Notes under the pieces: generated by a model
What the model was told of the DNA's origin: nothing
Database searches by the model: none
Seen by the model: only the letters and a program-made list of their open reading frames with translations
Translations under genes and position numbers: made by a program
Shown here: positions 961 to 31,902 of the stretch, piece after piece
Layout: each line of letters begins with the position of its first letter
How positions within the stretch are numbered: the stretch's first letter is position 1
Assembly (NCBI GenBank): GCA_964035545.1
Contig: OZ037768.1
Span: forward strand, 18,397,700 to 18,461,699
Source: Bugula neritina
Lineage: Eukaryota > Animalia > Bryozoa
Length of the DNA stretch: 64,000 bases
Direction of reading: 5' to 3'

Positions 961-3900
961 CAATAGAGAATTTGATAAGTGGGGAGCTCATCTTTCCAAC
1001 CCCTCCCCTGCTGTAACCAAATACTCTTAAATTATAAAAACTGTTTTTCTCAAAGTTGTAGTCTATGAATATCCAAGTTCTACGGCCACAATCAAAATCC
1101 ATTGCATTCCTCACATCTTCTCCTTGTCTCCAGATACGAACCTAAAATAAGAAAAATGGAAGTCACTGACATATAATGGCTTATTAATACTCTGCCCTTT
1201 ATGCTTTTGATTGAGTATTTTTGAAAAAATAATAACAATCACTTACTTTCTAGATAGGAAGGGTTTAAAATTCATTAAAGAAAGTCTTAAAATAACTACA
1301 TTATTAAATTATGAATAGCATTGTTGGCACAAGCAAGCTGAGGTACAAAGACTCAAAACAAAAAGTTCTTTATGATTAAAATTGGTAACTAGCAGCTCAA
1401 ACTCGAATTAAAATATCATTTAATACAATTTGATGGGTGTCCAAATCATAAGTTGAGATCACACCAAGCCTTATTTTGCTAAATAACTTTTTAGCTACAC
1501 AATGTTTCAATAGGATATATTGAATAATGAACAGGCTAGCTATAATTATGTAATATCGGTAAATATCTGGTGGTAAACAAGTTGTTGATAGTGTGGGAAA
1601 TGTTCTAAAACACAAGAGAGATGCTTCTAATGATGTACTAATACTCTAGAGGATACAACACAATAATACTATACGCATATTTCTGTGCTTTTAAATCTCA
1701 GCATCAAATCGCCTCATTGTTATCGTCTTTATATAAAATAGACACTTGAAACTAAACTGTTAAATGCCATTATCTAAACAAAGAGTTAAATCAGATAATA
1801 AAATCTTATTAATAAAGTGAAGTAACTAGTAAAGTCTGAAGGACAGTAAATTATGCTGGACTGACACTAGTCATGGAAGTCAGATAAAATTCAAGTATAT
1901 CACTGAGTGAAATCTTTAATCAAGTTATTTCTTGCTGTCATTAGGCAAGCAGAAGTGGCTTCTATGTCTACCAGACTTAGCTGCTCTTAATCGACAACAA
2001 TCTTAAGCAAATGATAAAAGCAGTTTTGTAAAAAAAGCTTATCACGTCGTTGACATAGTGGCAGGTGTGTGAAAATCCTACAACCAGAGGAACAATGATG
2101 TTTTCTAACTAAACATAATTTTTAGCTTAGTTGGTTTTGATGGCGTTTGCTGTAACTGTGATAGTTGTATTTACAATCTTGAATAATCAATAATCAGACT
2201 TTCTTATGAGATAATGAAAGTAAACCATGACTAGTTTATATCATATTTTATTATAGTATGACTTGTGAGCTGACAGTTTATACCTTATATCCATCGAGAG
2301 GTTCTTCGTTAGGGCCTGTGACAACACCTCGGAAATTGACTCCAAGAGTTCCATCAGTTGTCCTGTTTATTGTTACATACTCCGGCATATTCAAAGGAGC
2401 TGCAATCAATATTCGTTGAATGAATAAAAAATGTTCAGGAAACCTTTCATGTTACAAAACACAGTTCTGTTTGATGATAGGGTTGGCAAAGATAACCATA
2501 GTCCTCTAATCAGAAATATATTACAATTAAAACTCGTATCAAGATTGAGTTTTCAACAGTATTGACTGTAAGTTACTGTTATGTTGTTCAAGGAAAATAT
2601 GTTTCCAGGTTTAGAAAACATGCACAATAAAATATATATTATAAGCAATACACATGTATGTATATTACACAACAGTATATGGATAGTAGAATATATATAA
2701 GCTCACCATTATACCAGGTAGTCTGAGAAATAATTCTACCAGGTGGTGCATCTCCAGCTGAGTTAAACAGCTGAGCTGTAACCAGGTAGTCTGTTGCTGG
2801 CTCCAGACCAATGATGGTACCTTCTGTAACATTACCAAGTACAGTGTTTCTACGTCCATACTCCTGTCTAGTCCCATCTTTCCAGTACTGGATCTGCAGG
2901 TAAACACAGTGGAGGTAGAGTAGGTAGACACAATGTAAGTAGAGTATGAATTTCAACAGCATAAAACCACTCTAGTGCTACCCTTACAAGAAATTGACAA
3001 TCTTCAACTAACTATGGTTAACTAATTACCAAACTAAAATTCAATTATAAAATTATATGGAATTTGCTAGTGGAAAAATTAAATCAGTAAAATAAAGAAG
3101 CGCGCATATAAAAATGCCTATATAACGTCATACAAAGAGAGTTATTGCATTTTTACAATGTTATAACAGATAACACTAAACTTTGATAATTTTAATAATT
3201 TCAGTATAGAATGTTTTAAGCATCACAAAAAAATATTTTTTATCAGCTATATGTTGGGTACAAAATTTAACCTTTTCAAGCAAGATCAATATTATGCTTT
3301 GTACTGTATTATGCACATTGCCAATGCGCAGGTGTTTGGGGTTCTATCTTACGCCAGTCTTATCCCTGCAAGACATTTAATAAGCTGGCGTTCATGAAAA
3401 GTTTTGTTTCAAGCAGTTAGTTGAAGATGAATTCTAATAGTTTTGAGTTGTCTTGCCTATCTATTTTAATAACAGTAACATGTCCCAACAGTTCATGTAC
3501 AGTAAAACGCTACCGTACTGCTCGCAACTTATATCTATGCATGCCTTTTGAAGCTAACTAAACATAGCACCCATGGACTTACATGAAAGCCAGAGAGCTC
3601 TCCTCCAGTGACAGTCTTACTGTTAGGAATAGGATCCCAGTAAACTGTTAGAGCTGTGGCATTCAGTGGCTGTACAAGTATCTGCTGGGGTGTTTGGGTT
3701 GGCACTACACATACAAAGGTTTTTACTTACACAATGCAATGCATGTACATGTTTATTGTTTTAACATCGGTAACATCAAAATATTTTCATATTTCATTTA
3801 TTAGATTATACCATATTTGGGTATTTATTATGTCATTGTTTAGTCTGAAAGCACATGTATCTTTTGAACTACATGCTATACTTTTATGCAGAAAATAACA

Positions 3901-6900
3901 TGATAGTGTTGGGTTTACAACGCCAATTCACTATACACTATACTACGTGGATTGGCCTGGAGTTCAAGCTAGATTGAAATTATAAGGAAAGGCTGGAATT
4001 ATTATCAGACACTATTATATCATTATGATTTTACAAATTTATTTGAATGCTTACTTCAAGTGCTAAAATATAAATAAGGCAATCTGATATTGCTACTTGC
4101 AAAAATTTTCAAGACTTGCCGCCAGTCAATCGAAATTTTCAGGTCAAGGCGAACCAAGTCAGTGATATTATCAAGTCAACTCAAGTCAAAGAGTTTCCTA
4201 TGCTCAAGTCTGCAAGTGTTCTAATCAATTTAGCCCTAACTCTGCACACAATTATTATGTCATCAAAGTACACTGTACACAGCGAAAATCCTAGCTGGTA
4301 AGTGGACAACTCCAATTTATATAAACTTTTATATTGTGATAAAAACCAGTGCAAGAGTTATTACTTCGACTATGCATGACTACTGGTACGACAGTGACTA
4401 CTTGTGTGACAGTGACTACTGGTGTGACAGTGACTACTACTCAGTAACTACTGGTGTGACAGTGACTACTAGTGTGACAGTGACTACTAGTGTGACAGTG
4501 ACTACTACTCAGTAACTACTGGTGTGACAGTGACTACTAGGGTGACAGTGACTACTAGGGTGACAGTGATACAGCTAGGAAACCAGGTCTTAGATTGTAC
4601 TGAAGCTAAAGCATACCTCTTACAGCTGACATTCCAACCACTGGCTCTGGTATTGGCCCATCTCCAATCTCATTTCTAACCCACACTCTGACATAGTAAG
4701 GTAGATAGTATTTAGTTAGGCCAACAGTCACAGTACATCTGGTAACCCACTGGTCTCTGTACACGTAGTTCATCTTTTCAGCATTTTCCTCAGGTTTACA
4801 ATTCTTCAAAGTTCAAATATATTAATTAGAATAATGAATGTATAGATAAAGCAAAAGTTTTTAGTAGAGGACACTGGTTAACGGCTTCATTTAGTGACAT
4901 AAAAATATTTGTTTCGATGGTGGTGTTTGTGTGAAACTTTTTAAATTAGCCTTGGGTAAAGTGGCTTATTTTAGGTGCAACTAAATGAATACATCGACAT
5001 GGAAGAAGCGCTTTCAAGTTTAAATCAACTTTTAAAACAGTTTCATACTAATCTGTGCAATTACTAATTTTTTCTGCAACTTCCATAAAAAACTTGTTCA
5101 GAAGGTAAAATGAGTGAATATAGGAAATATAAGAAAATTAAACTACTTTGTAAAAATGAAGTCAAATTAAATTTTATATCAAGTCTAGATCCATCTCATT
5201 TATACTGTAAACTTGTTAGCTGTTAGCTTCACTTACACTCCATAAACCAACAGAAACATCTTCATTGTACTCTTTATACTCAATCATGTATTCAATGCTA
5301 CGTGCATTCCATTGCTCTCTTGGCAGAGGATCCCACTCAATAACCAGGGTGCCTTCCTTTCCACCCCCAGCCCTTATGTTAGTTGGATATGATGTAGGCT
5401 TATCAGGAGTTGTCTGAACTAGGGCTACAAGCAGATAATAAACTACAGTGTCCCGGTGTCCCTACATAATATATTAGGCAATTGATGCTGATTTTAAAAT
5501 AGCATTTTAGCATATTTTTGAATTATAAATTCCAATGTATAAAACTGCCCAACAATTAAACGACCTTATAAATATGACAAATGCTCTATATACCATCCAC
5601 TCATTCAGCAATGGGTAGTAAATACTAAATTTATGAATGTAAAAGCTAATTGCTTGATATGCTTCACAACCTAAGAGTTCCATTATATGTCAGCCTTGTT
5701 TATTGCTTTGCAATATAGAAATAAAAAATATATCAATTCTTATAGAAAGTTGTTTTTAAACCACAACTTATTCTGCCAACCTTAGCAAGTAATACGAGTA
5801 TGAAACTCGGTAATGCAGTTCAGGAACACAAAGACTTACGAGATTCAAGACTTGCAACTCCAACTCCATGTATATTGACAGCTTTAATTCTAAACTTGTA
5901 GCCAGTGTCAGCAAACAGTCCAGTAACTGTTGTGTTGCTAGTTGCAACGTCTGTTGGGTCAGTAACTGAAAGAGTAAACCCATCATCAGGTTTATTGCAA
6001 TAATATAAGTCACCAAGTCTCCCAGATTCTCTAGGATTCTTTATTATTTTAATTATTCTCTAGCCATCTTTCGTTTTTACTTCTCTGTTTTTAAAGCCCT
6101 AACTAAAAGTTCCTTAACCCATGTGCAAATTAAAAACAACTCTTTTTTAAACACAGTGCCACTGCTCATTCTGGGTTCTGGTCTATATTAGTGGTTGTTT
6201 ATGGTACATTTAAAACTTTTACTAAAATACTCTTCAACCGGGCCTGTTTGTTAATATATTTTAATGCTTATAAATATATTTTAATAAAACAGTAACACTA
6301 ATAAATATTAGGCTACTAAAGTTAGTTGAAAATAATTTCTCACATATTAGAACTTTCACTTGCTGAACCAGAACTTGCGGGTTAAAAAGCTGTTTTTTAA
6401 TATAATTATTGACTACTTTCTTGAAGTATTATATATTTTTAAATAACATCAATGTAAGTATAAAGGACAGTATAGCAATGGATTGCAATGCAGTGAAAGT
6501 GATGTGGAAATTTAAAATAAACTAGCGTGCTTATTATGCAAATAATGCTGAAACTACTGTAATATATAAAACATAGCAAAAGGTCTAAACATCATCAGTA
6601 ATGATGGTTTTTCTTGTATCTGCATATACACGTGTGTAATTGTGTGTTTTATAAGATTATATGATGTAAAGTACAATAATCTAAGTACATTCATACAGAA
6701 AATCTACACTTCATATCTAATAGAGCAACATAATGTTTATCCCAGCCATTAGCATAAGGGCTATGCAAATGCAAATTAACTGTTCAACTTTTATTTTAAA
6801 ATTTTATTGTTTCAATAAGTTTAGTTTTGAAATAAATTTCGTGTATCAATTATGTAGCAGTTAATACACTTTTATTAAAGTTGAGAAAAAATTATCTTCT

Positions 6901-9900
6901 CACCATCATAATTTCTAATGCAAACACAATGTTCTATCTCCTAAATACCTACTACAACTTACATATGAATTTGTGTCAGATAACTGAAGCATGACTATAA
7001 AACCTCAAACTTATAAGAGAAAAATCTGTTCGCTCAATATTTTTGAAGTAAACTAAATTGTTATGTAACACATAGAAAGTACCTTCTTTGGCAAGAACCC
7101 ATTCTTGAGATTCTACATTATACTTTTCTATAATGTAGAATATGATTTTCTCTCCATTAGTAGCTCCCTTAGACCAAGATACAATAGCAGAGTGTTTTCC
7201 TGGGTTACTTGCTTTAATTCCAGCGGGTTCTCCTGGAGGTCCTGTCAAGAAAAACAGAATTACTGAAATCATAGGCTATAGTATCAAAACAACCAGACAG
7301 TCACAAACCAGCTAAAAGGTAATAGCCACAGACTATTCAAGAATTCTGAGTTTTAAATCTTTAATATAGTCTATAAAATTTATTATTTAAGGTTGCAGAA
7401 AGGCTTATATTTAATTATTTTTAGAATAACTACCAAAACAATCAGTTGGAGCTCATTTCTTATACTATTAGACTGAGCTAGGTTTAAGTCACATTGACTC
7501 AGGGAATTCTTTGACTTTATTGACTTGACTCAACTTAACCCAATTGAAGGACCTTATGCAAGTCTTAGAAATTTGTAGCAATTCTAAGTGTTAAATTGCC
7601 ATATTTGGCATTTAACACAGCAAGCTTTCAGATAATTTTTTGAATCAATAGTTTTAGTATGTTAAGAGTGATCCTAGTGATATATAAAGAGACATGATCC
7701 AAAACCTTTTGCTTAGGCTGCTGAATGCTTGCAAATACCCATAATTAATGTAATTGTATGAAATATGTTTAATTTTAAATAGTAATTATATATCGACTTA
7801 AGCCTATAACTTAAAGTATTGATTGACTTGAATTTTTCTGTTTAAACTGAGATCTGGTTTCATTAACTTTGCTTGTCGTTTTACATAACAGAGCATTATT
7901 AGTGAGTTCTATAACATAACCCATTCTGTATTTATGTTCACTAATAAATACCAAGCTATATGATTTGTAATGCAACTTTTACAGAGAAATGCGTTTTTGG
8001 GAAAACAATTTGACCTTAGACAGTAGCAACAATCTTAAGTAAGCCTCGTGAGAGTTTATAAGGTATATTAAAATTGTGGAAACGCCAAGTGAACCTACCA
8101 AATACTCCGATTCTTGCGGGGAGTGTAGCCTGATCACTCTTGGTCTTGACTTGACATTTATAATAGCCTCTTTCCTCATACGTTATGTTAGAGATATGTA
8201 GGTCGCCTCTACTCACCCCCTCACCACGTTTGTATGTCTGGGACATCTTCCAGTCATCAAAGTCTATCACTACACAACAGACGTAGTATGAACTTTATTA
8301 GGCGATGCATAACAATATATAATTATGTAATAGTTGCTTCTATGATATAATATAATAATGATATAAATAAAATTGTGATCAGAAGAGGTAGGTGCAGTAA
8401 CGGAGAAATTAAGAAAAGCCTGTGTTCTAGGTTTGAAATGAAGCAAAAAAGTTTTGTTTTCACGAGAATTTCAACAGTGCCCCAAATCATGGGTAGAGCA
8501 TGCAATAAATTGACCAGGGTGTCGTTTGTTACACAATCAAAGCTACACCAATTTATCCTTAATTTTGAAAATGACAAGTCATGTGGCCAGAAGGAGAAGC
8601 TTTCTTAGCAACCAATCTCAAATATCACGGTAACTTACGCTTGTCATTGTGATACCATAAATAGACAATATCCAGGATGCGGTGGAAGTTAGCTCTGCAT
8701 TTCAACACAACATGTGACCCCAACAAATAGTCGTCTGCTGCTGGTCCATAGTTTAGAGTTGTCCTCTCTACAATGCATAACCTGTAGGTGAATTGTTAAA
8801 AGACCAGTAAAATAAATTGCTGGAAGCCACATGCTTATCAATTTGTAGTATTTTGACCCTTATAAACTTCAATGACTTACGGACAACTTTGAGGAAGGTT
8901 GTAGCCCGAGCCTCACTCAGTCTTTCACCAGTTTCAGGATTTAAGGCTGTGTTCTCAGCAACACAAGTATACTCAGCCTCGTCTACATTCTTCTGTATTC
9001 CGCTGAGGTAAAGGTCATCATTGGGTAGAATTCGCTTTGGACTTGACGAATCTTTGTTTACATTGAAAGGCTAAAATATTTTATAATGTTAGGTGGTAAT
9101 TATGCCTTAATTTGTTTCTTCCTTACTCTTATTAAATTCTGTAAGTAACAGAATAACACACACAATAATATATGTATTTATGTAACACACAATAAAATAA
9201 TATGTATTTTTAAATATATGGTGCGAATTTTTGTAATTCCTGCTACAATCAACTAGGAATATGACAACTTATGTTTACTTATGTTTTAGTTGTAACTTAC
9301 CACTCCATTCTTTAGCCATCTTATAGTTGGTTTGGGTGCTCCTTCAGGACTACATGGAATAGTTGCATTTCCTCCTTCAGTTGCCAGAACTTGGCTAAGC
9401 ATTGGATGGTGTTTAAAATTGGGTGCAAACTCTAAAAGTTATTAAACAAGACTAACTTTACTTTACTCTTTAAAGCTTCAAGATACTTTCTATGCCTGGA
9501 AGAAAACAAAATCTAGCTTTTGGAGCTCAAGGAAACAAATAAACAAGGGGTGAAATTGTTAAAATAGTCTTACCTAGCACTCTGACTTGAGCAGAGCTGT
9601 ATGTAGTTCCATGAGAATTGCTGGCTGCACACTGGTACATCCCAAGATGAACATTTTTATCTAAATTATGAAACTGAAGGACTCTGTTGTTATCACTGAA
9701 TGAGATTCCTGCGGGCGTGTTAGCACCCCCCAGCAGAGTTCCATTAACATACCAGGAATATGTGGGCTAAAATAGAGAATCATCACTTATCCTTTGAATT
9801 GCTCTATAAGCAGCTCCGAGTTGGAAGTGATTGAGTGCAATAGTTTGAGGTTTTCGAATTTGGAGTTGGGATCCCCAACAATGAAATCACAAGAACCCCA

Positions 9901-18392: not shown

Positions 18393-21300
18393 TCAAAAAA
18401 CACCCGCTAAGATTTGGTGAAAAATAAGAATGAATGATATTGAGATATATGAGGCGGAAAGACAGTAAGAACCTGAACAAAGATATTTCCATACTGTTTC
18501 AGTGTCGTCGGTGGTTTGCTTCTGATTGCAGCCTAGTAAATACACAGCAAAATAACATAATATAACATAACACAATAATATAGTATAACACAATAATATA
18601 ATATAACAATACAATAATATAGGATACAGAGAAGAATAGTTAAATAATTAGAAGGTCACAGAACTGAGTCTACATCACAGTTTGAGAAGCAGTGAAACAT
18701 GATATTCACGAAAAAAGTAAATTTCAATACAATTTTCACATTTTAATAATTATATTGCTGAACAACCAGAAAAACGGACAAAAAGTAATTTCACGAATAA
18801 TTTGTTGTAAGAAGAGTTCTTACCAATAGAGAATTTGATAAGTGGGGAGCTCATCTTTCCAACCCCTCCTCTGCTGTAACCAAATACTCTTAAATTATAA
18901 AAACTGTTTTTCTCAAAGTTGTAGTCTATGAATGTCCAGGTTCTACGGCCACAATCAAAATCCATTGCATTCCTCACATCTTCTCCTTGTCTCCAGATAC
19001 GAACCTAAAATAACAGAAATGGAGTCACTGACATATATTGGCTTATCAAATTCAAACTTTCATTCTAAAACAGCATAATTAAATGATAAACTTGGACCAA
19101 TGATGATAATGAGATATTTGTAACTTTTCAAACATGCATATTAATGTTTAAACAGACTTTTCAAAAACTTATAAAATAAATTATTTTACAAAGATATCAA
19201 AATCCCTACAAACTTTCAAGTCAGACACACTTGATGCTGGTGCCACTATTTATAAATAATATTAAACATATTTTATTATAGTATGACTTGTGAGCTGACA
19301 GCCTATACCTTATATCCATCGAGAGGTTCTTCGTTAGGGCCTGTGACAACACCTCGGAAGTTGACTCCAAGAGTTCCATCAGTTGTCCTGTTTATTGTTA
19401 CATACTCCGGCATGTTCAAAGGAGCTGCAATCAATATTCGTTGAATCAATAAAAAAATGTTCAGGAAACCTTTCATGTTACAAAAACACAGTTTTGTTTG
19501 ATGCTATAAGAGTTGACAATGATGGCCATAATTCTAAATATTAAATATACTAAATATATAAATATTTTACATAAAAACCACATTTACTTCTGATGTTAAA
19601 GCTAAAGAAAATAACAAAACAAATTATTAATAAAATGCTCACCAGAGTGAACTTTCTCAGCAATGAGGGCAAATTATTGCTAGCGCCTTCTAGAAACTAC
19701 TGGTTGAAATTTAGAAAATGTGCACAATAAAGAATTTACACACATGTATACAGTATATTACACAACAGTATACGGATAGTAGAATATATATAAGCTCACC
19801 ATTATACCATGTAGTCTGAGGGATAATTCTACCAGGTGGTGCATCTCCAGCTGAGTTAAACAGCTGAGCTGTAACCAGGTAGTCTGTTGCTGGCTCCAGA
19901 CCAATGATGGTACCTTCTGTAACATTACCAAGTACAGTGTTTCTACGTCCATACTCCTGTCTAGTGCCATCCTTCCAGTACTGGATCTGCAGGTAAACAC
20001 AGTGGATGTAGTGTGGGTAGACACAGTGAAAGTAGAGTAGGTAAACACGGTGTAAGTGGAGTACACATTTAAACAGCAAACAACCACACAACTGTGGTGA
20101 TGCTTAGATAGATTAGGCAGCAATAGTATGAATAAATGCTGCTAAGTATGGTAGGCACATTACAAAATATCCCAACAAACACTTCTAGATTCCATAATGT
20201 AAAGCCTTTAAACTATAAACTACCAGCTAACCTATTATCTTAGCACTGTTATTTGTTGACCAACTTAACCTGTGACCAAAAAGATTGACCATCAACACAA
20301 ATAGCACGAGATGTAGTATTTTCAGTCAACTTGTAATATGTAACAGGACTTATAGGCATAAACATACCACATGTACTGAATCTAACTGATGTAATTTTTA
20401 GCTAACATCACATTGGAATAAGTAGAGAGGCAAGAATAAACCGGATATATGTAAAAACACTAGTAATCAGCTGTACACAAAAAGTATCGTATATGTCAGT
20501 GCTCAACTGTTTACTAGTGAAAAATAACAAATTTGATCGAACACTGTTGACAAGAGTGAAAGACCTAAAATCAGGTAAGCGCTAAGCACATGATTTGAAA
20601 CAACTCGGTTTAGACTTGATATACCTAATTAGAGAACTACCAGCATCTGGAGACTTACATGAAAGCCAGAGAGTTCTCCTCCAGTGACAGTCTTACTGTT
20701 AGGAATAGGATCCCAGAAAACTGTTAGAGCTGTGGCATTCAGTGGCTGTACAACTATTTGCTTGGGTGTTGAGGTTGGCACTAAATGTATATCCAACATA
20801 ACGTTATGCAAATGTACATATAACACGTTATGTTTGTATGTTTATGTGTACAATTCTATATTATGTAAGAGTGCATAACTGATTGCTATACATTATAATG
20901 TAAGCAAATATAATTACACCCAAACAAATGACTTTTTCACTCATCATAAGAAACACATACATCAGATAATTTATCAAAAGAGTAAATATTAGTGCCTTCA
21001 ATAAGTGTGCCCAAATTGTTACAAATTATGCTTTTTCCAACAATAGATGAAAGATTCAAAATATCAATTTAGGAATCCCAAGCAGTATCACTAGTATCTG
21101 TTCATCATTCACTTGGAGAGTTTACCTAGAGTTTGATTCGGTTGATAAGTTACCCATTTTAAAGTGTATTTTATGAATATTCTTCTCAACAATAAAAGTA
21201 AGATACACATTCAAACAACAGTAAAAGTATATTATAATGAAGCTAAAGCATACCTCTTACAGCTGACATTCCAACCACTGGCTCTGGTATTGGCCCGTCT

Positions 21301-24300
21301 CCAACATCATTTCTAACCCACACTCTGACATAGTAAGGTAGATAGTACTTGGCACTACCAATAGTCACCGTGCACTTGCCAGTCTTCTTGTCACCATGCG
21401 GAATCGGCACATCGTCATTACATCCCTTCATACAAAATATGAACCTCTAGTTTTTATCTAGCACAGTTTAAAGGGTCAACTATTATACCAAGAGCAATGC
21501 TAGGTTATGTAAGCTCGCTTGTAACCAGAGCTAAAAAATGTTTCGTACAGTTACGATAAAGCAGTTCAATATTGAGTTTTTATAATTTTATAAAACAATT
21601 CGGATGAAACAGAAAACAATTCTTACAACAATAGTCAGATTTAGACATTTATATTCATGTAACGACTCTTAATATTCATTTCACAAAATAGTATTTGTGC
21701 CAAACACTTCTCCTTTCCATGAATATGAAAAGAAACTGCAAAATACATTGATCAGAAAACTTCACATTAAAGAGCAATAAAGATATTTTCTGACCATTGT
21801 TAACTCTATAAAGTAAGTCATACTCACACTCCATGAACCAACAGTAACATCTTTATTGTACTCTTTATACTGAACAATGTAGAAAATGCTACGCGCATTC
21901 CATTGCTCTCTTGGTAGGGGATCCCACTCAATAACCAGGGTGCCTTCCTTTCCACCCCCAGCCCTTATGTTAGTTGGATATGATGTAGGCTTGTCAGGGG
22001 TTGTCTGAATTAACTCTACAAACAGATCAGGAACTGTGATTTGTTGTCTGTTAACTATAATCCTGTACATCTGCTAACCACACAATAGAATGGAATATAA
22101 GAATGAACACAGAGTATAAAATGTCCTGCTGGTGAAGAGCTTAACAAATACTCACTAGATTCAAGACCTGCAACTCCAACTCCATATATATTGACAGCTT
22201 TAATTCTAAACTTGTAGCCAGTGTCAGCAAACAGTCCAGTAACTGTTGTGTTACCATTCGCCACATCGTCTGGGTCAGTAACTGAAAGACAACCGGCACG
22301 ATAAGACAACGAAGTAGAGCAGTGCTTAGTGGAGTAAGAGAAATTATTCTAACATTTCAATATTATATTGGGCAATATTCTAGGCTAGAGTTATGCAAAC
22401 ACATACACTTTGTTACCATTGCTTTGCATTATGCAAATGGATTTTTCATTTAATGTTTGGGAACAGGTCAATTGAATGAAACCACAACCATAACTTAATG
22501 CAATCCGTAAGAATAATTATTACACAACTCTATCCGTACGGATTTATTCGAAGCAATGGGCACAGTGATAGAAATGTAATTCCAAGCATAAGTATGGAAC
22601 TCAAAAACTACCTTCTTTGGCAAGAACCCATTCTTGAGATTCCACATTATACTTTTCTATAATGTAGGAAGTTATTTTCTCTCCATTAGTAGCTCCCTCG
22701 GACCAAGACACAATAGCCGAGTGTTTTCCTGGGTTACTTGCTTTAATTCCAGCAGGTTCACCTGGAGGTCCTGTTAAAAGATAATTGCAGAATTACGGAA
22801 AGTCATGACTTTTTAAGTAAATATCCTGCCACATAGCTAATGAAGACTTTCAACACCAGTTAAATTAAAAAAAACAAAACATAAAGACTATGAAAATTAT
22901 TTAATAAGTCAATAAACATTGAGCACAGCACAGCACAATTTTTCGGAAATAAATTTGCAAACTGGTGTAAAATGTTTGTTTTTCTGTCCAAGACTTTTAT
23001 TTAAGGTCATTGCCTCGTGCACACACTTACTAAAACATAATCCTGTTTGTAAATCACAAATTGAGATTAGGGTATTGTCAGTCCATTAACTCTTGGCAAT
23101 CAAAATTAAATGTATGATGGTGGCTATGTGCAACCCTTAGCCAGCTAATAAGACATTATTTTCATATGAATTAGCAGGGAGGGTGATTAGATAAATACTT
23201 TTGTATAGGTTAGAAAGATAGACTAATTCTAGAACTTACCATAGACTTCGACTCTTGCGGGGAGTGTAGCCTGATCACTCTTGGTCTTGACTTGACATTT
23301 ATAATAGCCTCTTTCCTCGTACGTTATGTTAGAGATATGTAGGTCGCCTCTACTCACCCCCTCACCACGTTTGTATGTCTGGGACATCTTCCAGTCATCA
23401 AAGTCTATCACTACACAACAGACGTAGTCTGAACTTTATTAGGTGATGCATAACAATACATAGTTATGTTATAGTTGCTTCTATGATATAATATCATATG
23501 GATATAAATAAAAGCTTCATTATGGGCAGAGCATGCAATAAATTGATTATGGACAGAAATAATTTAATTATACAGTATAATACAAGACAAGTACACAAGT
23601 AGGGTGCATATAATGTGCATAATGTTGTCATTAAACATGATGAAGGATAAAAAATTATATAGGCAAGGGTATGAAACAAAAAGACATGCTTACAAATATT
23701 ATACTTTGAAACTTCAACTTAAACATTGTGATTTGAACAGTTTTATTTAGTTTTACAATCGCAGCATAACCAGACAGGAGGGCATTAAGATGAAGCTAAT
23801 CATACTAGAAAATAAGGCACAAAACAATTACGATTCTAACAACTTTTACTCTTCCTATGTCCCTCCACATACTGAGTCAACTTACGCTTGTCATTGTGAA
23901 ACCAGAGGTATACCAGGTCTAAGATATTGTGGAAATTGGCTCTGCATTGCAGCACAACATCTGTACCCAGCAGATAGTCATCTCCAACTGGGCCGAAGTC
24001 CAGAGTTGTCCTCTCTGCAATGGTACATATTACATTGGTCAGCTGATGAAATCCCCAACATAATTGAGTACTGGTAGCACAGTTAATAGAGCATCTTCAG
24101 TGACTTACGAACAACTTTGAGGAAGGTTGTAGCCTGAGCCTCACTCAGTCTTTCACCAGTTTCAGGATTTAAGGCTGTGTTCTCAGCAACACAAGTATAC
24201 TCGGCCTCGTCTACATTCTTCTGTATTCCGCTGAGGTAAAGGTCATCATTGGGTAGAATTCGCTTTGGACTTGACGAATCTTTGTTTACATTGAAAGGCT

Positions 24301-27300
24301 AAAATATTTTATAATGTTGGGTGGTAATTATGCCTTAATTTGTTTCTTCCTTACTATTATTAAATTCTGAAATTGAAAGGCTAAAATATGTTTTAATAGT
24401 CTGTAAGAAAATGCCCTAAACTGTTTTTTTACTATTATTGCATTATGTAAGTAATGGAGTAACTCAACAATAACCGAAGGCTTGGGAAGAACACTACTAT
24501 ACAGCAGTAAATAACATTTTCATTTAACATTTAGAGACAAGAATACAACTAGATGAAACTGTCTATCGTCACGGCAATTAATTGAAGAGTTTAGTATAGT
24601 GTAAAGATAACATTCTCCATGTCCCCCAAGAAGAAAGCATAAATCTTAGGTTGGCCAATATACTGTAACTTACCACTCCATTCTTTAGCCATCTTATAGT
24701 TGGTTTGGGTGCTCCTTCAGGATTACATGGAATAGTAGCATTTCCTCCTTCAGTTGCCAGAACTTGGCCTAGCATGGGGTGTTTATTGAAATTGGGTGCA
24801 AACTCTACAAGGGGGCCAGGAAATGTGAGCTCAAAGTAACACATGAATCATATATATTTATATACTCAGTCACTTTTCTAGTCACTTTTATTGACTAATT
24901 AATTTTCAATAAACAATTTACTGGCTCTAGTGTTTCAGTAATGTGAATTATATTGCTAGTCCAACTACCGTTGCAAAATTTAGGTCGAGTGATTTGTGCT
25001 AAGGGGACAAGTTTATGAAAGCTTGCTTCAAAGTTGTACTACATATAAGCTATATTGAAATTGAAATTTGCTGCAAGTAATACAGCCACCATATGCATTT
25101 ATATCTCTATTAAAATGGCTGCTCATAATTTGAAAATGTACAGAATTACAGAGTTTCATGGCAATAAAAACGCTGAATGGCAAGAAACCCAATCCAATGA
25201 GGTTTAATTCAGTATTTAGTCGCATTCATGTTTGAGCATATGGAGTCTGTATCATGTGATTTAATCATAATAACGTTTACCAATCACCACTCTCATAATC
25301 AGGTAACCCCCCCTACCTAGCACCCTGACTTGAGCAGAGCTGTATGTAGTTCCATGAGAATTGCTGGCTGCACACTGGTACATCCCAGGATGAACATTTT
25401 TATCTAAATTCTGAAACTGAAGGACTCTGTTGTTATCACTGAATGAGATTCCTGCGGGCGTGTTAGCACCCCCCAACAGAGTTCCATTAACATACCAGGA
25501 ATATGTGGGCTAAAACATAAAATCATCACTTAGCATTCACTTTAATATGAGTAGGTATGAGTACTCAACACTCTATTGTTAAAATCATTAAAAAAGAGAC
25601 AATTCTACTCTCTTTAACACGTTCTGAGTCACAATTACTATCATTTGATACATACTTGAGGATTTCCATTGGCAAGACACGTCCACTCATAGTCACCTCC
25701 CTGGTCTAAATGGAGATTATCTAACCTCCCTTCACCAAAATACGGTTTGGCTGGAAACACAATTAAAAAAATACACAGGCATTGAATTCTCACACTCGAT
25801 TGACAATCAAATCATAAAATGAGCTCCGTAGTAAAGGTAATATAGTTTGAAAAAGACAAGAAAAATTTGTCTCAAGCAACTAGTAACGTCTCTGGAAGAC
25901 TTGCATTTCCGTTAAACGACGGACTGTTAGTATTTTAACAATTAAATAAACTGCAATGTGTAATTTCCTCAAGTACAATGGCAATAACAATGGCTATTGC
26001 TATAGTTTCCATTTAAAACTGGACATATTTCTGACTGACTGTTCACGCTGTACGCCAAACTCTATTCACTATATTTGATATAAAATTACTCCTAAAATGC
26101 TTTTCATCAACGTTTGAAATCAACAGAAAACAGCTGTGTCTGATCTCATAAAATTCTCTTGTCACAAAACTAAAATGTTCGACTAGCAAACTCATGCCAT
26201 ACTTATAAAAATAAGAGCTTAGCTTGAATGTCATTTAGCACAACATTCAATTAAACCTTATCTCTTTCCAAAAAGACAAAATCAATGACTATAACTTCTA
26301 AACACCATAAAAACAGTGTGTAGAATAAAAGCAAGCAACATATCCAAAAGTAATTTTCGATTAAAAATAATAGATCATAAAAATGGTGGCAAAATAACTT
26401 ACACGATATACGAAGGGCAACGGTTTGAAAATCAGATGATTGCACATCTGAAACTGTGCAGGTGTATTCTCCTTCGTCTTGTGATGTCACACTCGGTATT
26501 ACAAGTCTACGATTATACTCGCTCTGCTCAACCACACTACCAGGTGGTAGAGGCAGACCATCGGCTCTCTTCCACTCATAGCGAGGTGGCTGACCATGGT
26601 TTCGGCTGTAGTTGAACATCACAGTCACACATTCAACATTCACATTAACAATAACAAAATCATGTTTTTACTATAATAATACAAAATATGAATTTTATCT
26701 TTTCATAACTTCAAGAGAAAAGAGTTATAGGAATTGACACCAAAAAATAAAGCAGATAATTTGGTAGACAACTGGACAATATGTTGTATATGAGCGAAAA
26801 TTTCAACAACTGGATTATAAATTTTTCAAACAAACATCCAACTGTGAAAATTTTTAAATGTTAAGTTATTAAAATCTTCCAAAAATTAGTCACAACAATT
26901 AATTATAGTTGTCCATTTGACGTGGCTGTTAATTGAGAGTTTTTAGCTCCATGAAATGTGTTTTAAGACACTCGGTGCACATGGCTGCTTCTAAAATCTA
27001 AAAACCATAAAAAGTTGTTTCTTTACAGTTTTGAAACTTTTTTTTTAAAAAAAGACTACATACCAACAACTTGGTGATTAATAAAAATTGCTTTCTTTTA
27101 CAACAGTTCTTTTAATGAAATTGCAATGATCAACAACTACCCAAAATACAGCTCATCACCAATCAACATATGGAAAGAAAACAATTTTATATAAATAACA
27201 AATCCGTACGTGAATCTAGCAAAGCACTCCAAATAGACTTTGTCTCCTTTGACAGGGTTCTTAGGTATTATCTTGATGAAGTCGTTGTGTATGAGAGGAC

Positions 27301-30300
27301 CAACATCCTGGTAACCTTTGCGATACAACATGGTACTAAGGCTAACAAGTTTGTACATGAATATAATTTATATGTTTAATCAACAATTTGATAGGCTGTT
27401 TTATAAAATTCATTATATATATTTAATGAATAAATTTCAACACACAGTTTAGGAAGCCGGATAGGTAGTAGAATACGGCAAGGGTAACTCACTTGGACTG
27501 GTATCAACTATTAGATTGTATGCTGCGCTGGTCCTAGACTCAGTTCCTCCACCCTCGATAGACACGGTGCAGTAGTAGGCAGCGTCGTCAGCGCTAGTAA
27601 CCGAGCTGAAATACAGGCTGCCAGACTTTGACACCAAGATGTGATTTCCATAACGTGGACTAATCCAATCCGTAGGATCATTGTTCTTGAACCATCTGTA
27701 GTTGTACCCTAAAATTTAAAAGTAATGTTTCAAATGATGATTTTTCAAATATTTTGCATATTCATTACCATGCAACAGTTTAGTAAATACATTTCCGCTC
27801 AAAAATGACTGGCCAGATTGAGGATGTAGCCCCACTTCTAGAGTGTTTGCTTCTGTGTTTAAGCATATAGCATGTCGAACTCCAAAAACTGAAACTGTCA
27901 ACAATGAAACATGTATACACAACTCAACAGGAATCAAACAACAAGGTAGAGATATTGAAAAAAGCTAGATTAGAAATGTAGCAAAAGAAGTTATATTCTT
28001 GTATTTTAATTTCAACGCGTGCCCCAAACCAAACTTTTTTGAGAAACTTGAAGAATTTGGGCTACTAAAAATCTTGAATACTGCACTTAAATGGACAAAC
28101 ATCCAGCAGACAAAAACAAACAACACTTACCGATGCCATCTTGTTTATCGTGATCGCAAACAATTACAGCTGACTCATATGCTCTAGCTGGAACATCTTT
28201 ATCATTGTTTGGAAATTCATTCAGGGCTAGAAAAGAATTACAGTTGCCTACTATACAATTTGACTTTAACTAAACTGGCAAACGTTGTGAGAATAGAGCC
28301 ATGCAATTTCCTACACATTGGAAATAAAAATATAACTTTTATCAGAAGTCTGTCCCATGATGAACACAAAATGACTTCTACTCACTCTATTTTATTATGC
28401 TGATGGTGGGAAAGTAACTTAACTTTATTTAAGTAAGTGCTTTTCATATTATATTGTCTTGCAACAACTTCACATGCTTTGATTGGCTAAAGAAACGACT
28501 TACTGATATATGAGATGGAGGCTGATTCACTTTTGACTTTTCCAAACTGATTGGAAGCCTCACACCAATAAGATGAAGTGTCTCGGTCTCTGCTAGGATC
28601 ATGTATGGTGAGGCGGCCATTAGTGATGGTGATGTGATTAGCATTAGTAGCAACTATCGGTACGGCCTGAAATATTTCAAGTGTTGTGAAAAATAAGCTA
28701 TACGCAATCAGGGTTTTTAGAAGTTGTTGCGATGCAGTGTGGTTGATCAGAATACATAGCCCAGTACTGTTGCTGACCGTATGCAGAAACGTAATTCACA
28801 AAAAAAAACTTCATACGTTTATAACTTCAAGATTTTCAGTCACAAATTCAATTTGGTGGAGTGACAAATTTCACCAATTTGTAAAAGCCACTCGTGAAAA
28901 TTTTTGTCTTGAGACTTAACTTAATCATGAGATTAACTAAAACCCCTTATTAACTGAAACTGAAGGTAAAAACACACCTTATTAAAATTATAAATGAATA
29001 CAAGAACCACCAAGAGAAGCAGCTGAAAACAACCAAATGCACTTTTCCAAGTTTATGTTTTTGCCCTTGGCAGATCTAGTGAAGACTTGATGACATTTTA
29101 TTCTACAAAGTCTCAATTTCTCTCACCTCTGCCCCTAATCCTGCGTACCACTGGTAGGTAGGTTGGGGGTATCCCTTGGCGTCACATTCAAAGGTCACCG
29201 AGGGACAATCTTGAGTGCATGCCGGAGCATCTATGCTAATTTGAAAGCGAATATCCTGAGGTTGTGTCACAAAGTAGGGACCTCTGTAGATCCTATCCGG
29301 ATGCACATCGTCAGCTCCAAAAACTAAAAACAATTGATTTACTGTCATTTTATCAACTTGTTCACTATGCAATCTATCAAACTGGTGTTCAACCATATTC
29401 TATTAAACTTAAGAGGTTATAAAAAATGTTTCCGGTGAAGTTAACCAATATATGTATATCTAATATTCATTTTATAAAACGAAAAGTTGATGAATTGTTA
29501 GATCTTAATATGGTTATTAAAGTTACATTTCTAAACTTGAGTCAAAAAAAAGTAAGAAAAGCCAAGACAAAGAGAAAAAGTGGCTGTTATAAGAGTAAAA
29601 ATACTCAGATTATCATTTCCCTATTTAATGATTAAACCATAATTGACAATAGTTTATAGAGTATATGAAACTTTAAACAGACTTGGTTAATAAGTTTGAA
29701 AAAATTTGCTTAAAAATTGCATCAGTAATGAGGATTACCAAGTAAATTGGTTCTCAAGAAACAAAAAGCATTTGTATGAAAAATGCAGAAAATATTTATT
29801 TGAAGAAAAATTCCATACTAAAAAGATCAATGTACTCACTAAAATCTCTTGCATTAGAATTAATTTCCGTCGCCTCAACTTTGAGTATCTCACAGATATA
29901 AGCTCTCTTGATTTCACCAACTCCTCTGACCCAGAAGTAACCGGGTTGATCCTGGTGGTTTCCCGTGTCATCATACTCATACACTACGTAGTCACCAGTA
30001 TCTGCCTGGGGGGTTTCTGGTGTAGTCCAAAAGACTGTGGAACCAAAACCTGTACCATCCAACCACTGGAAGGTGGGACTTGTACTGATGGAGTTTGGTT
30101 GCACGTGTCCAGACGTGTACCAGGTGTTACGCTGACCTGGTTTATCATCATTTATTGAAAACCAATTTTGTACAAACTGATTTTCTGCTTCAGAGTTGAT
30201 ACTGATAAGTTCAGCACCTTGTTTCTACAATAAGTAAGTACACTAATAATAAATAAATGAATCACTAAACATATACCAAAATTTCAACAATGATGGTAGT

Positions 30301-31902
30301 ATCAGTATGGTTTCTTAAAATAGTTTACAACTTCCCAACTAATGATCAAAACATTCAAACTGTGACTGTGATTTTCAGTTTAAATCTCATTAAACAACTT
30401 TGCTTCTGTATATCTTTCGGGAATTGCAGTCGAAAAATCTTTGGAAAATATGAGCTGTTATTTTATTATTCATTTCTACTTATTGATAAGTATGAATTGT
30501 TGATATGTTACTGGGATAGCTATATGAGTGATACTACGGTAAACCGATAGAGCTCTGAAATAAAATATTATTTCATTTGTAGTCATTGATATTTCAGCCG
30601 TTCAATTTAGTATGCACAACTTCTCAAGTGGGGAGTTTGATTTTCAATTCAATTGTCCATATCTTAAAAATAGCTAAACCACTCTCAAATCTTTATTTGC
30701 TCTTCGCTATAGGCCCATCAGCACATTTTCTATATTTCTAGAGGTCAAGTTAAAACAGGGCAAAATTGCCTGGAACTAACAAATATACAATTTGGGGTAA
30801 AAAGACAACTATATGTTTATATGGTTAGTACGCTGGCTCACAACCTTTTTAGTATGTTTTATATATTTTCTCTCCCCACTTGTTAGCCAATGTTTGTGCA
30901 AAGCAAAACGATGATGTGAATTGCTTTTAGTATATCGTCATTCAGACATTATCTTATGAAACAAACCCTATAACCAAGTTAAAAAATATTACTTCGCCTA
31001 AATTAAAATTTTTATCACAATAGCTCAGCATTTATGCCACAAACGTCTAGGAGTATGGCAAAACTTTTCAAAATCTTGTGTCACTATACTCCGTGTCACC
31101 TACACACTTGATTAACTTATTCCCTTTAGATCATAAAAAGCATACAGAATGCTAATATTATATTTCATAATTGAAAAGACAGGCCATTCCTATACAGCAC
31201 CAGCAACAAACATCTTAATTGCAGTCACAACTGTGAAAACCGGTCTCCAACTTGTGAATTGGTGTAATTTGACAAAATAAGAACAAACTTATTGGTTTGA
31301 GGAGGATATTTTTTAATACCTAAAAATCAATTACAACAAAACACTGAATACCTGTAACAGTAACCTGGTATCCTTTATGTAACACTTACCTGACAATTGA
31401 TCATAGCATCTTCCCAAGACAACAGGGAATCTACATCTGACACAAACTTGTAACACTTAGATGATTCTGGAACCCATGGAGACGGACATTCAGGAGAAAC
31501 TGAAACATTAAACTGTTTAGTAGTATAAATCATAAACATCTCAGTAACATAACACAGAGAGAAACATATGATAATATACATGTCTATCAAGACAATTCAC
31601 TGAGGTAGTACACAATATTAGTAAATCTTCTAGTTTAAAAGCAAGACATTTCATTGGCCTATCACAAGCAAACAAGTTCAATTTTATACATTTACAAATA
31701 AGATGACTATCATCATCACAATCCTTTAACATTTTAATAATTGCATAAATTAAGTTAATTAATATTGTTTGTGTTTAATAATACGTTTTTTATCTACAAA
31801 ATATGCTAATAAATTTAGAGCAGTGATCTTACCAGGATTTTGACTAACAGCACACTCTGTTAGCAGAGTGATTATTAATAAACATAGTCTGAGGAACATC
31901 AT
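18393..31902 (-). CDS. Cont: Contactin (CTL-6Ig-4FN3-GPI), tandem copy B; complete, 24 coding exons, about 1281 aa
   Basis: Exons 31833-31902, 31390-31499, 29840-30224, 29127-29323, 28504-28666, 28131-28226, 27493-27708, 27210-27315, 26403-26605, 25656-25750, 25317-25509, 24674-24804, 24109-24298, 23886-24014, 23240-23410, 22612-22770, 22156-22281, 21828-22015, 21254-21425, 20659-20780, 19800-19986, 19309-19424, 18824-19004, 18393-18532. Exon sizes and phases match copy A except +3 nt in exon 7 and -15 nt in exon 19. The last exon ends LCSGSYCLSASYISISFILIFHQILAGVF*: small residues followed by a hydrophobic tail and no cytoplasmic domain, i.e. GPI-signal-like. Confidence 0.92.
19992..20063. 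repeat. 24-bp minisatellite abutting the exon-21 acceptor (3 units in B; 2 units in A at about 2899-2946)
   Basis: GGTAAACACAGTGGATGTAGTGTG-type units shared by both paralogues. Confidence 0.7.

What the first reader, a model, noticed from the sequence alone, without database searches (positions are those of the whole stretch)
961..31902. Tandem contactin pair with bimodal, exon-scale mosaic divergence: homogenised scaffold, divergent recognition surfaces
Seen (hand counts): exon 2 differs at 1/110 nt, exon 8 at 1/106, exon 10 at 1/95, exon 13 at 3/190, exon 22 at 2/116 and exon 23 at 3/181. In contrast exon 6 differs at 25/96 and exon 14 at 31/129, including many synonymous sites, and most intron interiors do not align by eye. 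Near-identity often runs 50-120 nt into flanking introns and then stops; it also switches off inside exons (last ~40 nt of exon 3, ends of exons 5 and 15). Inference: an old duplication with recurrent interlocus gene conversion, resisted in specific segments. Established: Ig-superfamily recognition systems (Dscam1, Hydractinia Alr) pair conserved scaffolds with variable specificity segments, and Drosophila has a single Contactin. This could be a contactin-based diversified adhesion or self-recognition pair, possibly part of a longer array continuing left of the window.
Basis: partly seen in the sequence, partly recalled or inferred. Interest (0 to 1): 0.85.

Follow-up and report, generated by a model that had tools for sequence, protein, structure and literature searches.

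The report
Gene-conversion mosaic in tandem contactin genes
Two neighbouring contactin cell-adhesion genes of a bryozoan (almost certainly Bugula neritina) are an old duplicate pair that keeps being partly overwritten copy-on-copy, exon by exon; this is a clean but ordinary case of gene conversion, not a diversified self-recognition system.

Summary
The window holds two intact head-to-tail contactin-type genes on the minus strand: signal peptide, C-type lectin, 6 Ig, 4 FN3 and a GPI-like tail.

- **Divergence.** Synonymous divergence is strongly heterogeneous: about 0-0.1 in exons 2, 8, 10, 11, 13, 15 and 20-23, against 0.5 to over 2 in exons 4, 6, 7, 9 and 14.
- **Tracts.** Near-identical tracts (19-287 nt) all touch exons, run 3-103 nt into the introns, then stop.
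- **Conversion.** Contigs from other Bugula samples carry both paralogues. Divergent blocks group by paralogue (35:2 sites). Inside two tracts the reference copies are closer to each other than orthologues are. This points to conversion after the taxa split.
- **Artefacts.** Assembly artefact and allelic haplotypes are very unlikely.
- **Recognition idea.** It is not supported. The genome has only two copies and no array. The divergent blocks are under purifying selection (dN/dS 0.09-0.31 between paralogues, pN/pS 0.10 between orthologues) and are not hypervariable.
- **Gene model.** RNA-like contigs show both genes spliced and reveal a 24th exon. Copy A's exon 24 lies just left of the window.

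Other notes of this scan report exon-restricted conversion elsewhere in this genome.

The parts
1..15998 (-). Gene A (downstream copy), ATG at 15998; exons 1-23 in the window. Exon 24 (GPI-signal-like tail and stop) lies just left of the window, at window coordinates -7 to -143 (G000:C4:18397556-18397692).
   Evidence: Model; exon 24; collinear tblastn to annotated contactins.
18393..31902 (-). Gene B (upstream copy), ATG at 31902, stop at 18393, 24 exons, about 1268 aa.
   Evidence: spliced RNA-like contigs across introns 21, 22 and 23.
15929..15998 (-). A exon 1 (signal peptide); B partner 31833-31902; 4/70 differences.
15451..15560 (-). A exon 2 (lectin start); B partner 31390-31499; 1/110; dS 0.
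14899..15283 (-). A exon 3 (C-type lectin plus linker); B partner 29840-30224; 27/385, of which 18 are in the last 40 nt.
14352..14548 (-). A exon 4 (Ig1 first half); B partner 29127-29323; 35/197. The first 71 nt are near-identical, the middle is divergent.
14031..14193 (-). A exon 5 (Ig1 second half); B partner 28504-28666; 11/163, clustered at the 3' end.
13725..13820 (-). A exon 6 (Ig2 first half), divergent; B partner 28131-28226; 25/96; dS 1.09.
12968..13180 (-). A exon 7 (Ig2 second half), the most divergent exon; B partner 27493-27708; about 68% identity plus a 3-nt length difference; dS saturated (2.6).
12473..12578 (-). A exon 8 (Ig3 first half), converted; B partner 27210-27315; 1/106. 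The tract runs about 95 nt into the upstream intron (12467-12672).
10556..10758 (-). A exon 9 (Ig3 second half), divergent; B partner 26403-26605; 47/203; dS 0.69.
10077..10171 (-). A exon 10 (Ig4 first half), converted; B partner 25656-25750; 1/95.
9574..9766 (-). A exon 11 (Ig4 second half), converted; B partner 25317-25509; 4/193.
9301..9431 (-). A exon 12 (Ig5 first half); B partner 24674-24804; 10/131, with 8 differences in nt 16-35.
8881..9070 (-). A exon 13 (Ig5 second half), converted; B partner 24109-24298; 3/190. The tract is 8867-9141.
8639..8767 (-). A exon 14 (Ig6 first half), divergent; B partner 23886-24014; 31/129; dS 1.56.
8099..8269 (-). A exon 15 (Ig6 second half), converted; B partner 23240-23410; 5/171. 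The tract reaches 103 nt into the upstream intron.
7083..7241 (-). A exon 16 (FN3-1); B partner 22612-22770; 11/159.
5840..5965 (-). A exon 17 (FN3-1); B partner 22156-22281; 12/126.
5237..5424 (-). A exon 18 (FN3-2); B partner 21828-22015; 18/188.
4617..4749 (-). A exon 19 (FN3-2); B partner 21254-21386; 21/133, with 18 in the first 39 nt. The acceptor is weak and predicted only.
3583..3704 (-). A exon 20 (FN3-3); B partner 20659-20780; 7/122.
2707..2893 (-). A exon 21 (FN3-3), converted; B partner 19800-19986; 5/187. The tract is 2660-2946.
   Evidence: B intron 21 joint.
2284..2399 (-). A exon 22 (FN3-4), converted; B partner 19309-19424; 2/116.
   Evidence: B intron 22 joint.
961..1141 (-). 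A exon 23 (FN3-4), converted; B partner 18824-19004; 3/181. The donor is at 960 (A) and 18823 (B).
18393..18532 (-). B exon 24: short stalk, hydrophobic GPI-signal-like tail and stop. It is 54.5% identical in protein to A's off-window exon 24.
   Evidence: RNA-like contigs join 18823 to 18531 with GT..AG ends on the minus strand.
15999..18392 (.). B-to-A spacer (B 3' flank plus A promoter). The orthologous spacer is contiguous with A exons 1-5 in an independent metagenome contig, L015.

Best explanation
An ancient head-to-tail duplication of the single invertebrate-type contactin gene in the bugulid bryozoan lineage is undergoing continuing interlocus (non-allelic) gene conversion. The tracts are short, tens to about 300 nt. 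They start where the copies are still similar, which means in exons kept alike by purifying selection. They spill a few to about 100 nt into the introns and end in intron sequence that has diverged and is full of indels. Exons, or parts of exons, that drifted past the identity needed for heteroduplex formation have dropped out of the exchange and now evolve as independent, paralogue-specific sequence under purifying selection. These are the Ig1 N-terminal part, all of Ig2, the second half of Ig3, the first half of Ig6, the start of the exon encoding the second half of FN3-2, and the GPI tail. The result is a bimodal, exon-scale mosaic. Shown here: the mosaic, its significance, two intact transcribed genes, the age contrast, tract-wise phylogenetic incongruence, and conversion after the split of two Bugula taxa. 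Inferred: the divergence-dependent barrier as the cause of the exon-scale pattern, and functional divergence of the N-terminal Ig head.
For: 1. Synonymous divergence differs 10- to 50-fold between exons of one gene pair (G=184, p=1.5e-27). Four-fold sites are clustered.
2. Thirty high-identity tracts of 19-287 nt, 28 of them on exons, extend 3-103 nt into introns, which excludes protein-level selection as the cause.
3. Exon 4 plus 80 nt upstream, four sequences (reference A and B, and metagenome orthologues L015 = A type and L020 = B type). In the divergent block 35 sites group by paralogue and 2 by species. In the adjacent 131-nt tract, reference A and B differ at 1 site while the other taxon's A and B differ at 12 (Fisher p=0.003).
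4. Exon 8 region with the B orthologue L023. Upstream of the tract, 15 sites have B equal to its orthologue and unlike A. Inside the tract, 10 sites have A=B unlike the orthologue, 0 group B with its orthologue, and 1 has A equal to the orthologue. Under homogenisation only before the split, the chance of 10 or more out of 11 is 1.3e-4.
5. In exons 4, 6 and 7 all five metagenome contigs cluster strictly by paralogue: 2-5% difference within, 18-27% between.
6. A contig of run X1 that ends exactly at the A/B branch points of the exon 3 tract carries B letters at 6 of the 9 sites where reference A and B differ. This suggests the conversion state is polymorphic.
7. Exon-only coverage and GT-AG joints in RNA-like runs for both copies.
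8. A published model with purifying selection plus divergence-dependent conversion yields this kind of exon/intron mosaic of divergence.
Against: - There is no GC enrichment at third positions in the homogenised codons (0.39 against 0.40), so there is no signature of GC-biased conversion.
- Only two tracts could be tested with orthologues of both copies.
- The metagenome contigs come from colonies and show more than one haplotype (L015 and L021 differ by about 5.6%), so the 'taxon' labels are approximate.
- The depth and absence arguments from Logan contigs are weak by the tool's own warning.
- Several exon borders (exon 7 donor, exon 8 and exon 19 acceptors) are predicted, not confirmed by RNA.
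Confidence: 0.85

Rival explanations
1. Selection, not only a passive homology barrier, keeps the divergent blocks apart. The two contactins have distinct ligand-binding heads (Ig1-Ig3), and converted haplotypes in those blocks are removed. This adds to the best explanation rather than replacing it.
For: The divergent blocks have the same borders in two taxa. Each paralogue's version is strongly conserved between taxa (pN/pS 0.10, pS about 0.10). The divergent part includes Ig1 and Ig2, the domains through which vertebrate contactin 1 binds neurofascin 155 (PMC9633819). The 5' flanks are also diverged, so the copies may be regulated differently.
Against: The mosaic follows exons, not domains: Ig3 and Ig6 are each half converted and half divergent. 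A divergence-dependent barrier alone predicts stable escaped blocks. There are no binding or expression data, and no converted haplotypes at low frequency have been looked for.
Confidence: 0.4
2. The pair is a diversified self- or allorecognition system of the Dscam1, Hydractinia Alr or Botryllus fuhc kind, with variable specificity segments on a constant scaffold, perhaps part of a larger array.
For: The animal is colonial. The proteins are Ig-superfamily surface molecules. The variable parts are concentrated in N-terminal Ig domains.
Against: There are exactly two copies in the genome and no arrays of alternative exons. dN/dS is 0.09-0.31 in the divergent exons. Orthologues from other samples differ by only 2-5% there, with pN/pS 0.10. 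Nothing contactin-like lies in the other 32 kb of the window.
Confidence: 0.03
3. A recent duplication followed by very fast local evolution of one copy, with the near-identical parts simply being young.
For: Distant relatives are somewhat closer to B than to A in the divergent exons: exon 7 at 61-69% against 53%, exon 4 at 60-64% against 54-58%. Four distant fragments also share B's form of the exon 3 linker. So A is the faster or the derived copy.
Against: Synonymous sites are saturated in the divergent exons (dS 1.1-2.6). Intron interiors are unalignable and of very different length. The divergent states are shared by both taxa, while A has changed little since their split (0 A-specific sites in exon 4). 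Inside tracts the paralogues are closer than orthologues.
Confidence: 0.05
4. Artefact: the assembly collapsed or cross-polished the copies, or A and B are two haplotypes placed in tandem.
For: Heterozygous marine invertebrate genomes are prone to retained haplotigs. No single read or contig spanning both copies was seen.
Against: Five contigs from two independent metagenome samples reproduce both paralogues and the same junctions between shared tracts and copy-specific sequence. L015 joins B's 3' flank to A's promoter and exons 1-5. Contigs of run X1 match copy-specific stretches with 0 differences. dS above 1 is far beyond allelic divergence. Scattered differences remain inside the tracts.
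Confidence: 0.02
5. Exon-limited homogenisation by conversion from spliced cDNA (an RNA-mediated template).
For: Essentially all tracts coincide with exons, and intron interiors are untouched.
Against: Most tracts run 10-103 nt into the flanking introns on one or both sides, and some stop inside exons. A spliced template cannot produce that.
Confidence: 0.02

Closest known systems
Interlocus gene conversion mosaics in tandem paralogues (e.g. Arabidopsis halleri HMA4, bioRxiv 10.1101/2025.10.29.685298; from my own knowledge also primate L/M opsins, RHD/RHCE and gamma-globins)
   Same: Tandem copies and short conversion tracts. Exons, including their synonymous sites, are homogenised while introns diverge. 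Divergence is mosaic within one gene, and conversion depends on remaining similarity.
   Different: This pair is much older in its escaped blocks (dS above 1). It is in a bryozoan and in a 24-exon adhesion gene. Whole exons have escaped permanently, giving a sharply bimodal pattern. No GC bias was seen.
Invertebrate Contactin (Drosophila Cont type; annotated contactin-like proteins of Owenia, Mizuhopecten, Argonauta and Tubulanus)
   Same: Architecture of N-terminal C-type lectin-like domain, six Ig, four FN3 and a hydrophobic GPI-like tail, about 1250-1270 aa. Collinear similarity over the whole length.
   Different: Only 31-51% identity per matched segment to the nearest full-length relatives compared, one annotated (Argonauta) and one unnamed. 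It is present as a tandem pair, whereas Drosophila has one gene (my own knowledge). No functional data exist.
Diversified Ig recognition systems (Dscam1, Hydractinia Alr1/2)
   Same: Ig-superfamily surface proteins with conserved and variable segments, in a colonial animal.
   Different: Two fixed genes instead of many isoforms or alleles. Purifying rather than diversifying selection in the variable parts. Little difference between individuals or taxa.

Membership tests
Contactin (invertebrate type) | Collinear full-length similarity to annotated contactins | tested here: met
   tblastn of two full-length contactin-type proteins hits 8-12 exon-level segments of both copies in order, from lectin to C-terminus, at 26-51% identity. 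The two are P0008 (annotated contactin-like, Argonauta) and P0007 (unnamed ENA protein).
Contactin (invertebrate type) | N-terminal C-type lectin-like domain | tested here: inconclusive
   Pfam Lectin_C on exon 3 alone gives E=0.0063, 17.7 bits, below the 22.6 cut-off. The exon aligns to the lectin region (residues about 55-170) of annotated contactins at E down to 1.7e-8. The domain is split over exons 2-3 and could not be searched joined.
Contactin (invertebrate type) | Six Ig domains followed by four FN3 domains | tested here: inconclusive
   Exon-wise Pfam hits to Ig_3, I-set or ig in exons 4, 5, 7, 9, 11 and 15, and to fn3 in exon 16; only exon 9 passes the gathering scores. The count of 6+4 rests on the exon pairs and on collinearity with 6Ig+4FN3 homologues. 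The joined protein was not scanned.
Contactin (invertebrate type) | GPI anchor signal at the C-terminus | not testable with these tools
   Exon 24 of both copies ends in a hydrophobic tail after small residues. No GPI predictor was available.
Interlocus gene conversion | Tracts of near identity covering synonymous sites and adjacent non-coding DNA within otherwise diverged paralogues, more clustered than chance | tested here: met
Interlocus gene conversion | Phylogenetic incongruence: tracts group by species, the rest by paralogue | tested here: met
   Exon 4 block 35:2 by paralogue. Exon 4 5' tract: A-B 1/131 against 12/131 in the other taxon. Exon 8 tract: 10 sites A=B against 0 grouping B with its orthologue. 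Only two tracts could be tested.
Interlocus gene conversion | GC-biased repair signature (frequent, not obligatory) | tested here: not met
   GC3 is 0.386/0.391 in low-divergence codons against 0.398/0.398 in high-divergence codons.
Diversified recognition system (Dscam1 / Alr type) | Many alternative variants (exon arrays, many paralogues or hyperpolymorphic alleles) | tested here: not met
   Two matches genome-wide for exon 3 and for exon 13. No internal exon duplications in the self-comparison.
Diversified recognition system (Dscam1 / Alr type) | Diversifying selection or high polymorphism in the variable segments | tested here: not met
   dN/dS is 0.09-0.31 between paralogues. Orthologue pN/pS is 0.10 with 2-5% nucleotide difference in exons 4, 6 and 7. 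The sample is small.

The most novel reading that the evidence does not exclude
Natural selection actively protects two different ligand-binding heads (Ig1 N-terminal part, Ig2, half of Ig3, plus half of Ig6) from an otherwise continuous homogenising exchange. On this reading a bryozoan has evolved two contactin specificities on one shared, concertedly evolving stalk, conserved across cryptic Bugula species. This would be a natural domain-swap experiment showing which contactin exons determine partner choice.
Probability: 0.35. Interest if true: 0.45.

Novelty: new member of a known kind. Interest (0 to 1): 0.3.

Why it matters
The pair is a very clean worked example, checked with orthologues, of how interlocus gene conversion, purifying selection and a similarity threshold together produce a bimodal exon-scale mosaic. 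It comes from a phylum (Bryozoa) with almost no molecular-evolution case studies. It is also a practical warning for annotation and selection scans in this genome. Per-gene dS, duplication dating and dN/dS tests will be misleading for tandem paralogues. Other unchecked notes of this scan report similar exon-restricted conversion at several other loci of the same genome. Biologically, it marks which contactin exons are free to differ between two co-existing copies (Ig1-Ig3, half of Ig6), which gives a testable hint about where partner specificity lies. It does not open a new kind of recognition system.

Tried and rejected
- **Whole-locus MAFFT alignments** timed out twice. I used exon-anchored pairwise alignments and BLAST tracts instead. 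Global alignment of introns with cheap gaps gave inflated identities of 63-86%, which I do not use as evidence.
All later work used coordinates only.
- **The first automatic exon chain** over-extended exons because of a length bonus. Borders were then fixed by phase and by A/B agreement. Exon 23 was at first read through to an in-frame stop and was corrected after RNA-like contigs showed intron 23.
- **DNA search of the own genome with the whole gene** was swamped by a dispersed repeat in intron 7. Exon protein searches gave the copy number.
- **Two metagenome scans** (exon 13; exon 3 of B) found nothing, probably because records near this genome are withheld there. One query was too short.
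- **The GC-biased conversion test** was negative.
- **Age of the duplication.** The word-based protein search with A's exon 7 found no distant A-like relatives. So I could not settle whether the duplication predates the split from the more distant species behind L016 and L018.
- **Joined protein.** No database search, Pfam scan, fold or complex prediction was done on the joined protein. The joined CDS was used only inside local scripts for dN/dS.


Full report
**What is there.** A self-comparison of the window gives a collinear chain of matches between 914-16050 and 18777-31954. The open frames in every block lie on the minus strand. Using reading-frame phase, GT-AG sites and agreement between the copies, I built two complete models. 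Both are intact.

RNA-like contigs later showed that exon 23 ends at a donor 181 nt in (961 in A, 18824 in B). It is spliced to a further exon that carries a hydrophobic, GPI-signal-like tail.
- B's exon 24 is 18532-18393.
- A's exon 24 lies 7-143 nt to the left of the window, in L019, and is only 54.5% identical in protein.
- The finding's left border (961) is therefore the end of exon 23, not of the gene.
- The order on the minus strand is B (31902 to 18393), a 2.4-kb spacer, then A (15998 to just beyond the window edge).

**What the genes are.** Exon-wise Pfam scans give C-type lectin (weak), Ig and FN3 hits.
- A library-wide phmmer search with exon 3 finds full-length proteins of 1183-1256 aa. 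Their sources call most of them contactin or contactin-like, from Argonauta, Owenia, Mizuhopecten/Pecten and Tubulanus.
- Two of these (P0007, unnamed; P0008, Argonauta contactin-like) align collinearly with 8-12 exon-level segments of both copies, from lectin to C-terminus, at 26-51% identity.
- The pair is thus the invertebrate type of contactin: lectin, 6 Ig, 4 FN3, GPI-like tail.
The joined protein was never sent to a search, scan or fold. The joined CDS was used only in local scripts.

**The organism.**
- The assembly has 216,009,554 bases, and matches fell on pieces numbered C1-C9. This matches the published Bugula neritina genome of 216.00 Mb in 9 chromosomes (PMC11480708).
- The related JGI contigs are named after AY690838, the B. 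neritina mitochondrial genome (PMC2678162).
- I take the window to be from B. neritina, a colonial cheilostome bryozoan.

**Check of the observation.**
So are the switch-offs inside exons 3, 5 and 15.
- Nei-Gojobori dS per exon is 0-0.1 in exons 2, 8, 10, 11, 13, 15, 20, 21 and 22. It is 0.46 in exon 4, 0.69 in exon 9, 1.09 in exon 6, 1.56 in exon 14 and about 2.6 (saturated) in exon 7.
- Heterogeneity among exons is overwhelming (G=184, df 22, p=1.5e-27).
- Differences at four-fold sites are clustered: 93 runs against 119.9+-5.3.
- Of 1252 aligned codons, 645 sit in windows with at most 5% divergence and 328 in windows with at least 15%.
- Stringent BLAST resolves 30 tracts of 19-287 nt at 92-100% identity, 3.8 kb in all. 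Twenty-eight lie on exons; one of the other two abuts the exon 8 tract. They reach 3-103 nt into the introns, and intron interiors give nothing.

**Copy number.** The proteins of exon 3 and of exon 13 each match exactly two places in the genome, both in this window.
- The rest of the window carries an intronless rhodopsin-type receptor gene, a WD40 exon and a CLU-like gene.
- According to another note of this scan, the left neighbour is a PDZ gene (not checked).
- There is no array.

**Is it real?**
- Five contigs from two JGI metagenome samples of Bugula reproduce both paralogues. L015, L021 and L022 are of A type; L020 and L023 are of B type.
- L015 starts about 140 nt downstream of B's stop codon and runs through the spacer into A exons 1-5. 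The tandem arrangement is therefore conserved and is not a scaffolding accident.
- L023 runs from B-type intron straight into the shared exon 8 tract.
- Contigs of run X1 match copy-specific stretches with no difference.
- Together with dS above 1 and introns of very different length, this makes collapse, cross-polishing or mis-placed haplotypes very unlikely. No read spanning the whole pair was available.

**Expression.** The RNA-like runs X7 and X8 cover exons, with little or no coverage of introns and spacer.
- They show joints with GT..AG ends (read on the minus strand) at A introns 2, 3 and 4 and at B introns 21, 22 and 23.
- The contig across A intron 4 continues 78 nt into the A-specific end of exon 4.
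- The exon 24 joint and the contig 18343-18531 are B-specific.
- Both genes therefore appear to be transcribed and spliced as modelled, at least in the animals behind those runs.

**Gene conversion tested with orthologues.** In exons 4, 6 and 7 every metagenome contig groups strictly with one paralogue: 2-5% difference within a paralogue against 18-27% between.

For exon 4 plus 80 nt of upstream intron, all four sequences are available.
- In the divergent block, 35 sites group by paralogue and 2 by taxon.
- In the adjacent 131-nt tract, the reference A and B differ at one site, whereas the other taxon's A and B differ at 12 (Fisher p=0.003).

For the exon 8 region:
- Upstream of the tract, 15 sites unite B with its orthologue against A.
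- From the tract border on, 10 sites unite reference A and B against B's orthologue, none unites B with its orthologue, and one unites A with it.
- If homogenisation had happened only before the taxa split, these three classes should be about equal. The chance of 10 or more out of 11 is 1.3e-4.

Conversion has therefore continued after the split of the two Bugula taxa. Synonymous difference between orthologues is about 0.10. That is similar to or larger than dS between the paralogues in converted exons, and 5-25 times smaller than dS in the escaped exons.

One contig of run X1 spans exactly the exon 3 tract (14939-15285). It carries B's letters at six of the nine sites where reference A and B differ, which hints that conversion states segregate in the population. 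This last point rests on contigs only.

**Why exon-scale.** The tracts cannot come from spliced cDNA, because they enter the introns.
- They fit the published model in which conversion needs similarity. Purifying selection keeps exons similar, so synonymous sites are dragged along. Introns, and any exon that has diverged too far, drop out (Teshima and Innan 2004 and Thornton 2007, as cited in bioRxiv 10.1101/2025.10.29.685298).
- The mosaic here follows exons rather than protein domains. Ig3 is converted in its first exon and divergent in its second, and Ig6 is the reverse. This favours a mechanical barrier over selection on whole binding domains.
- I found no GC3 excess in the converted codons.

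**The recognition idea.**
- The divergent exons are under purifying selection between the paralogues (dN/dS 0.09-0.31). They are under stronger purifying selection between orthologues (pN/pS 0.10).
- They are not hypervariable between samples.
- With only two genes, this is unlike Dscam1 or Alr.

What remains plausible is ordinary subfunctionalisation.
- The escaped part includes Ig1 and Ig2, through which vertebrate contactin 1 binds neurofascin 155 (PMC9633819).
- The promoters are diverged.
- Each copy's version is conserved.
- Distant relatives (L016, L018, P0034) are somewhat closer to B than to A in the divergent exons. Four distant exon 3 fragments share B's form of the linker. A is therefore the derived or faster copy.
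- Whether the duplication predates those species could not be decided.

**Context in this scan.** Other notes on the same genome describe exon-restricted conversion between paralogues at several other loci: a PAN exon, BCL11 fingers and a PAN+TPR receptor pair. I did not check them. If they hold, this pair is one instance of a common behaviour of this genome.

**Verdict.** The conversion reading is well supported. The array is refuted and the recognition-system reading is not supported. Selective resistance remains open. This is a new, well-documented member of a known kind.

Noticed in passing
window 960 to -143 (left edge; L019 9857-9993): Copy A's last coding exon (exon 24, GPI-signal-like tail) lies just outside the window. 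Intron 23 is about 970 nt in A against 291 nt in B, and in A it holds a repeat.
   Followed up: yes
window about 12700-12900 (A intron 7): A dispersed element of about 150-200 nt with at least 40 copies at 75-88% identity on many chromosomes (SINE- or MITE-like). It swamped the DNA search of the genome.
   Followed up: partly
window 392-820 and 41085-41469: An interspersed repeat of about 430 nt at 81% identity, one copy in A intron 23 and the other near the receptor gene.
   Followed up: no
window 4377-4569 (A intron 19): A short tandem repeat with a period of about 68 nt and copies 95% alike.
   Followed up: no
window 39505-40581, minus strand: An intronless 358-aa ORF with a full rhodopsin-family 7TM domain (Pfam 7tm_1, E=2.4e-46).
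   Followed up: partly
window 48191-48526 and 59678-61126, minus strand: A WD40-repeat exon, and exons with eIF3_p135 (CLU-type) and TPR domains, belonging to neighbouring genes upstream of the pair.
   Followed up: no
L015 4033-4035 (orthologue of A exon 3): The metagenome A-type contig lacks 57 nt (19 codons, in frame) of the lectin exon relative to both reference copies. This is either an allele or an assembly gap.
   Followed up: partly
L015 against L021/L022: Two A-type contigs differ by about 5.6% over 700 nt, although L015 and L022 come from the same sample. The sample therefore holds several haplotypes or cryptic types of the animal.
   Followed up: no
window 14939-15285 (A exon 3 tract): In run X1 the only contig laid here ends at the A/B branch points and carries B's letters at six of nine A/B-different sites. 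This is a possible segregating conversion haplotype.
   Followed up: partly
window 18550-18625 (B intron 23): An AT-rich low-complexity stretch with very high summed contig depth, small indels and back-joints in the DNA runs. It is a repeat-prone spot and gives unreliable joints.
   Followed up: no
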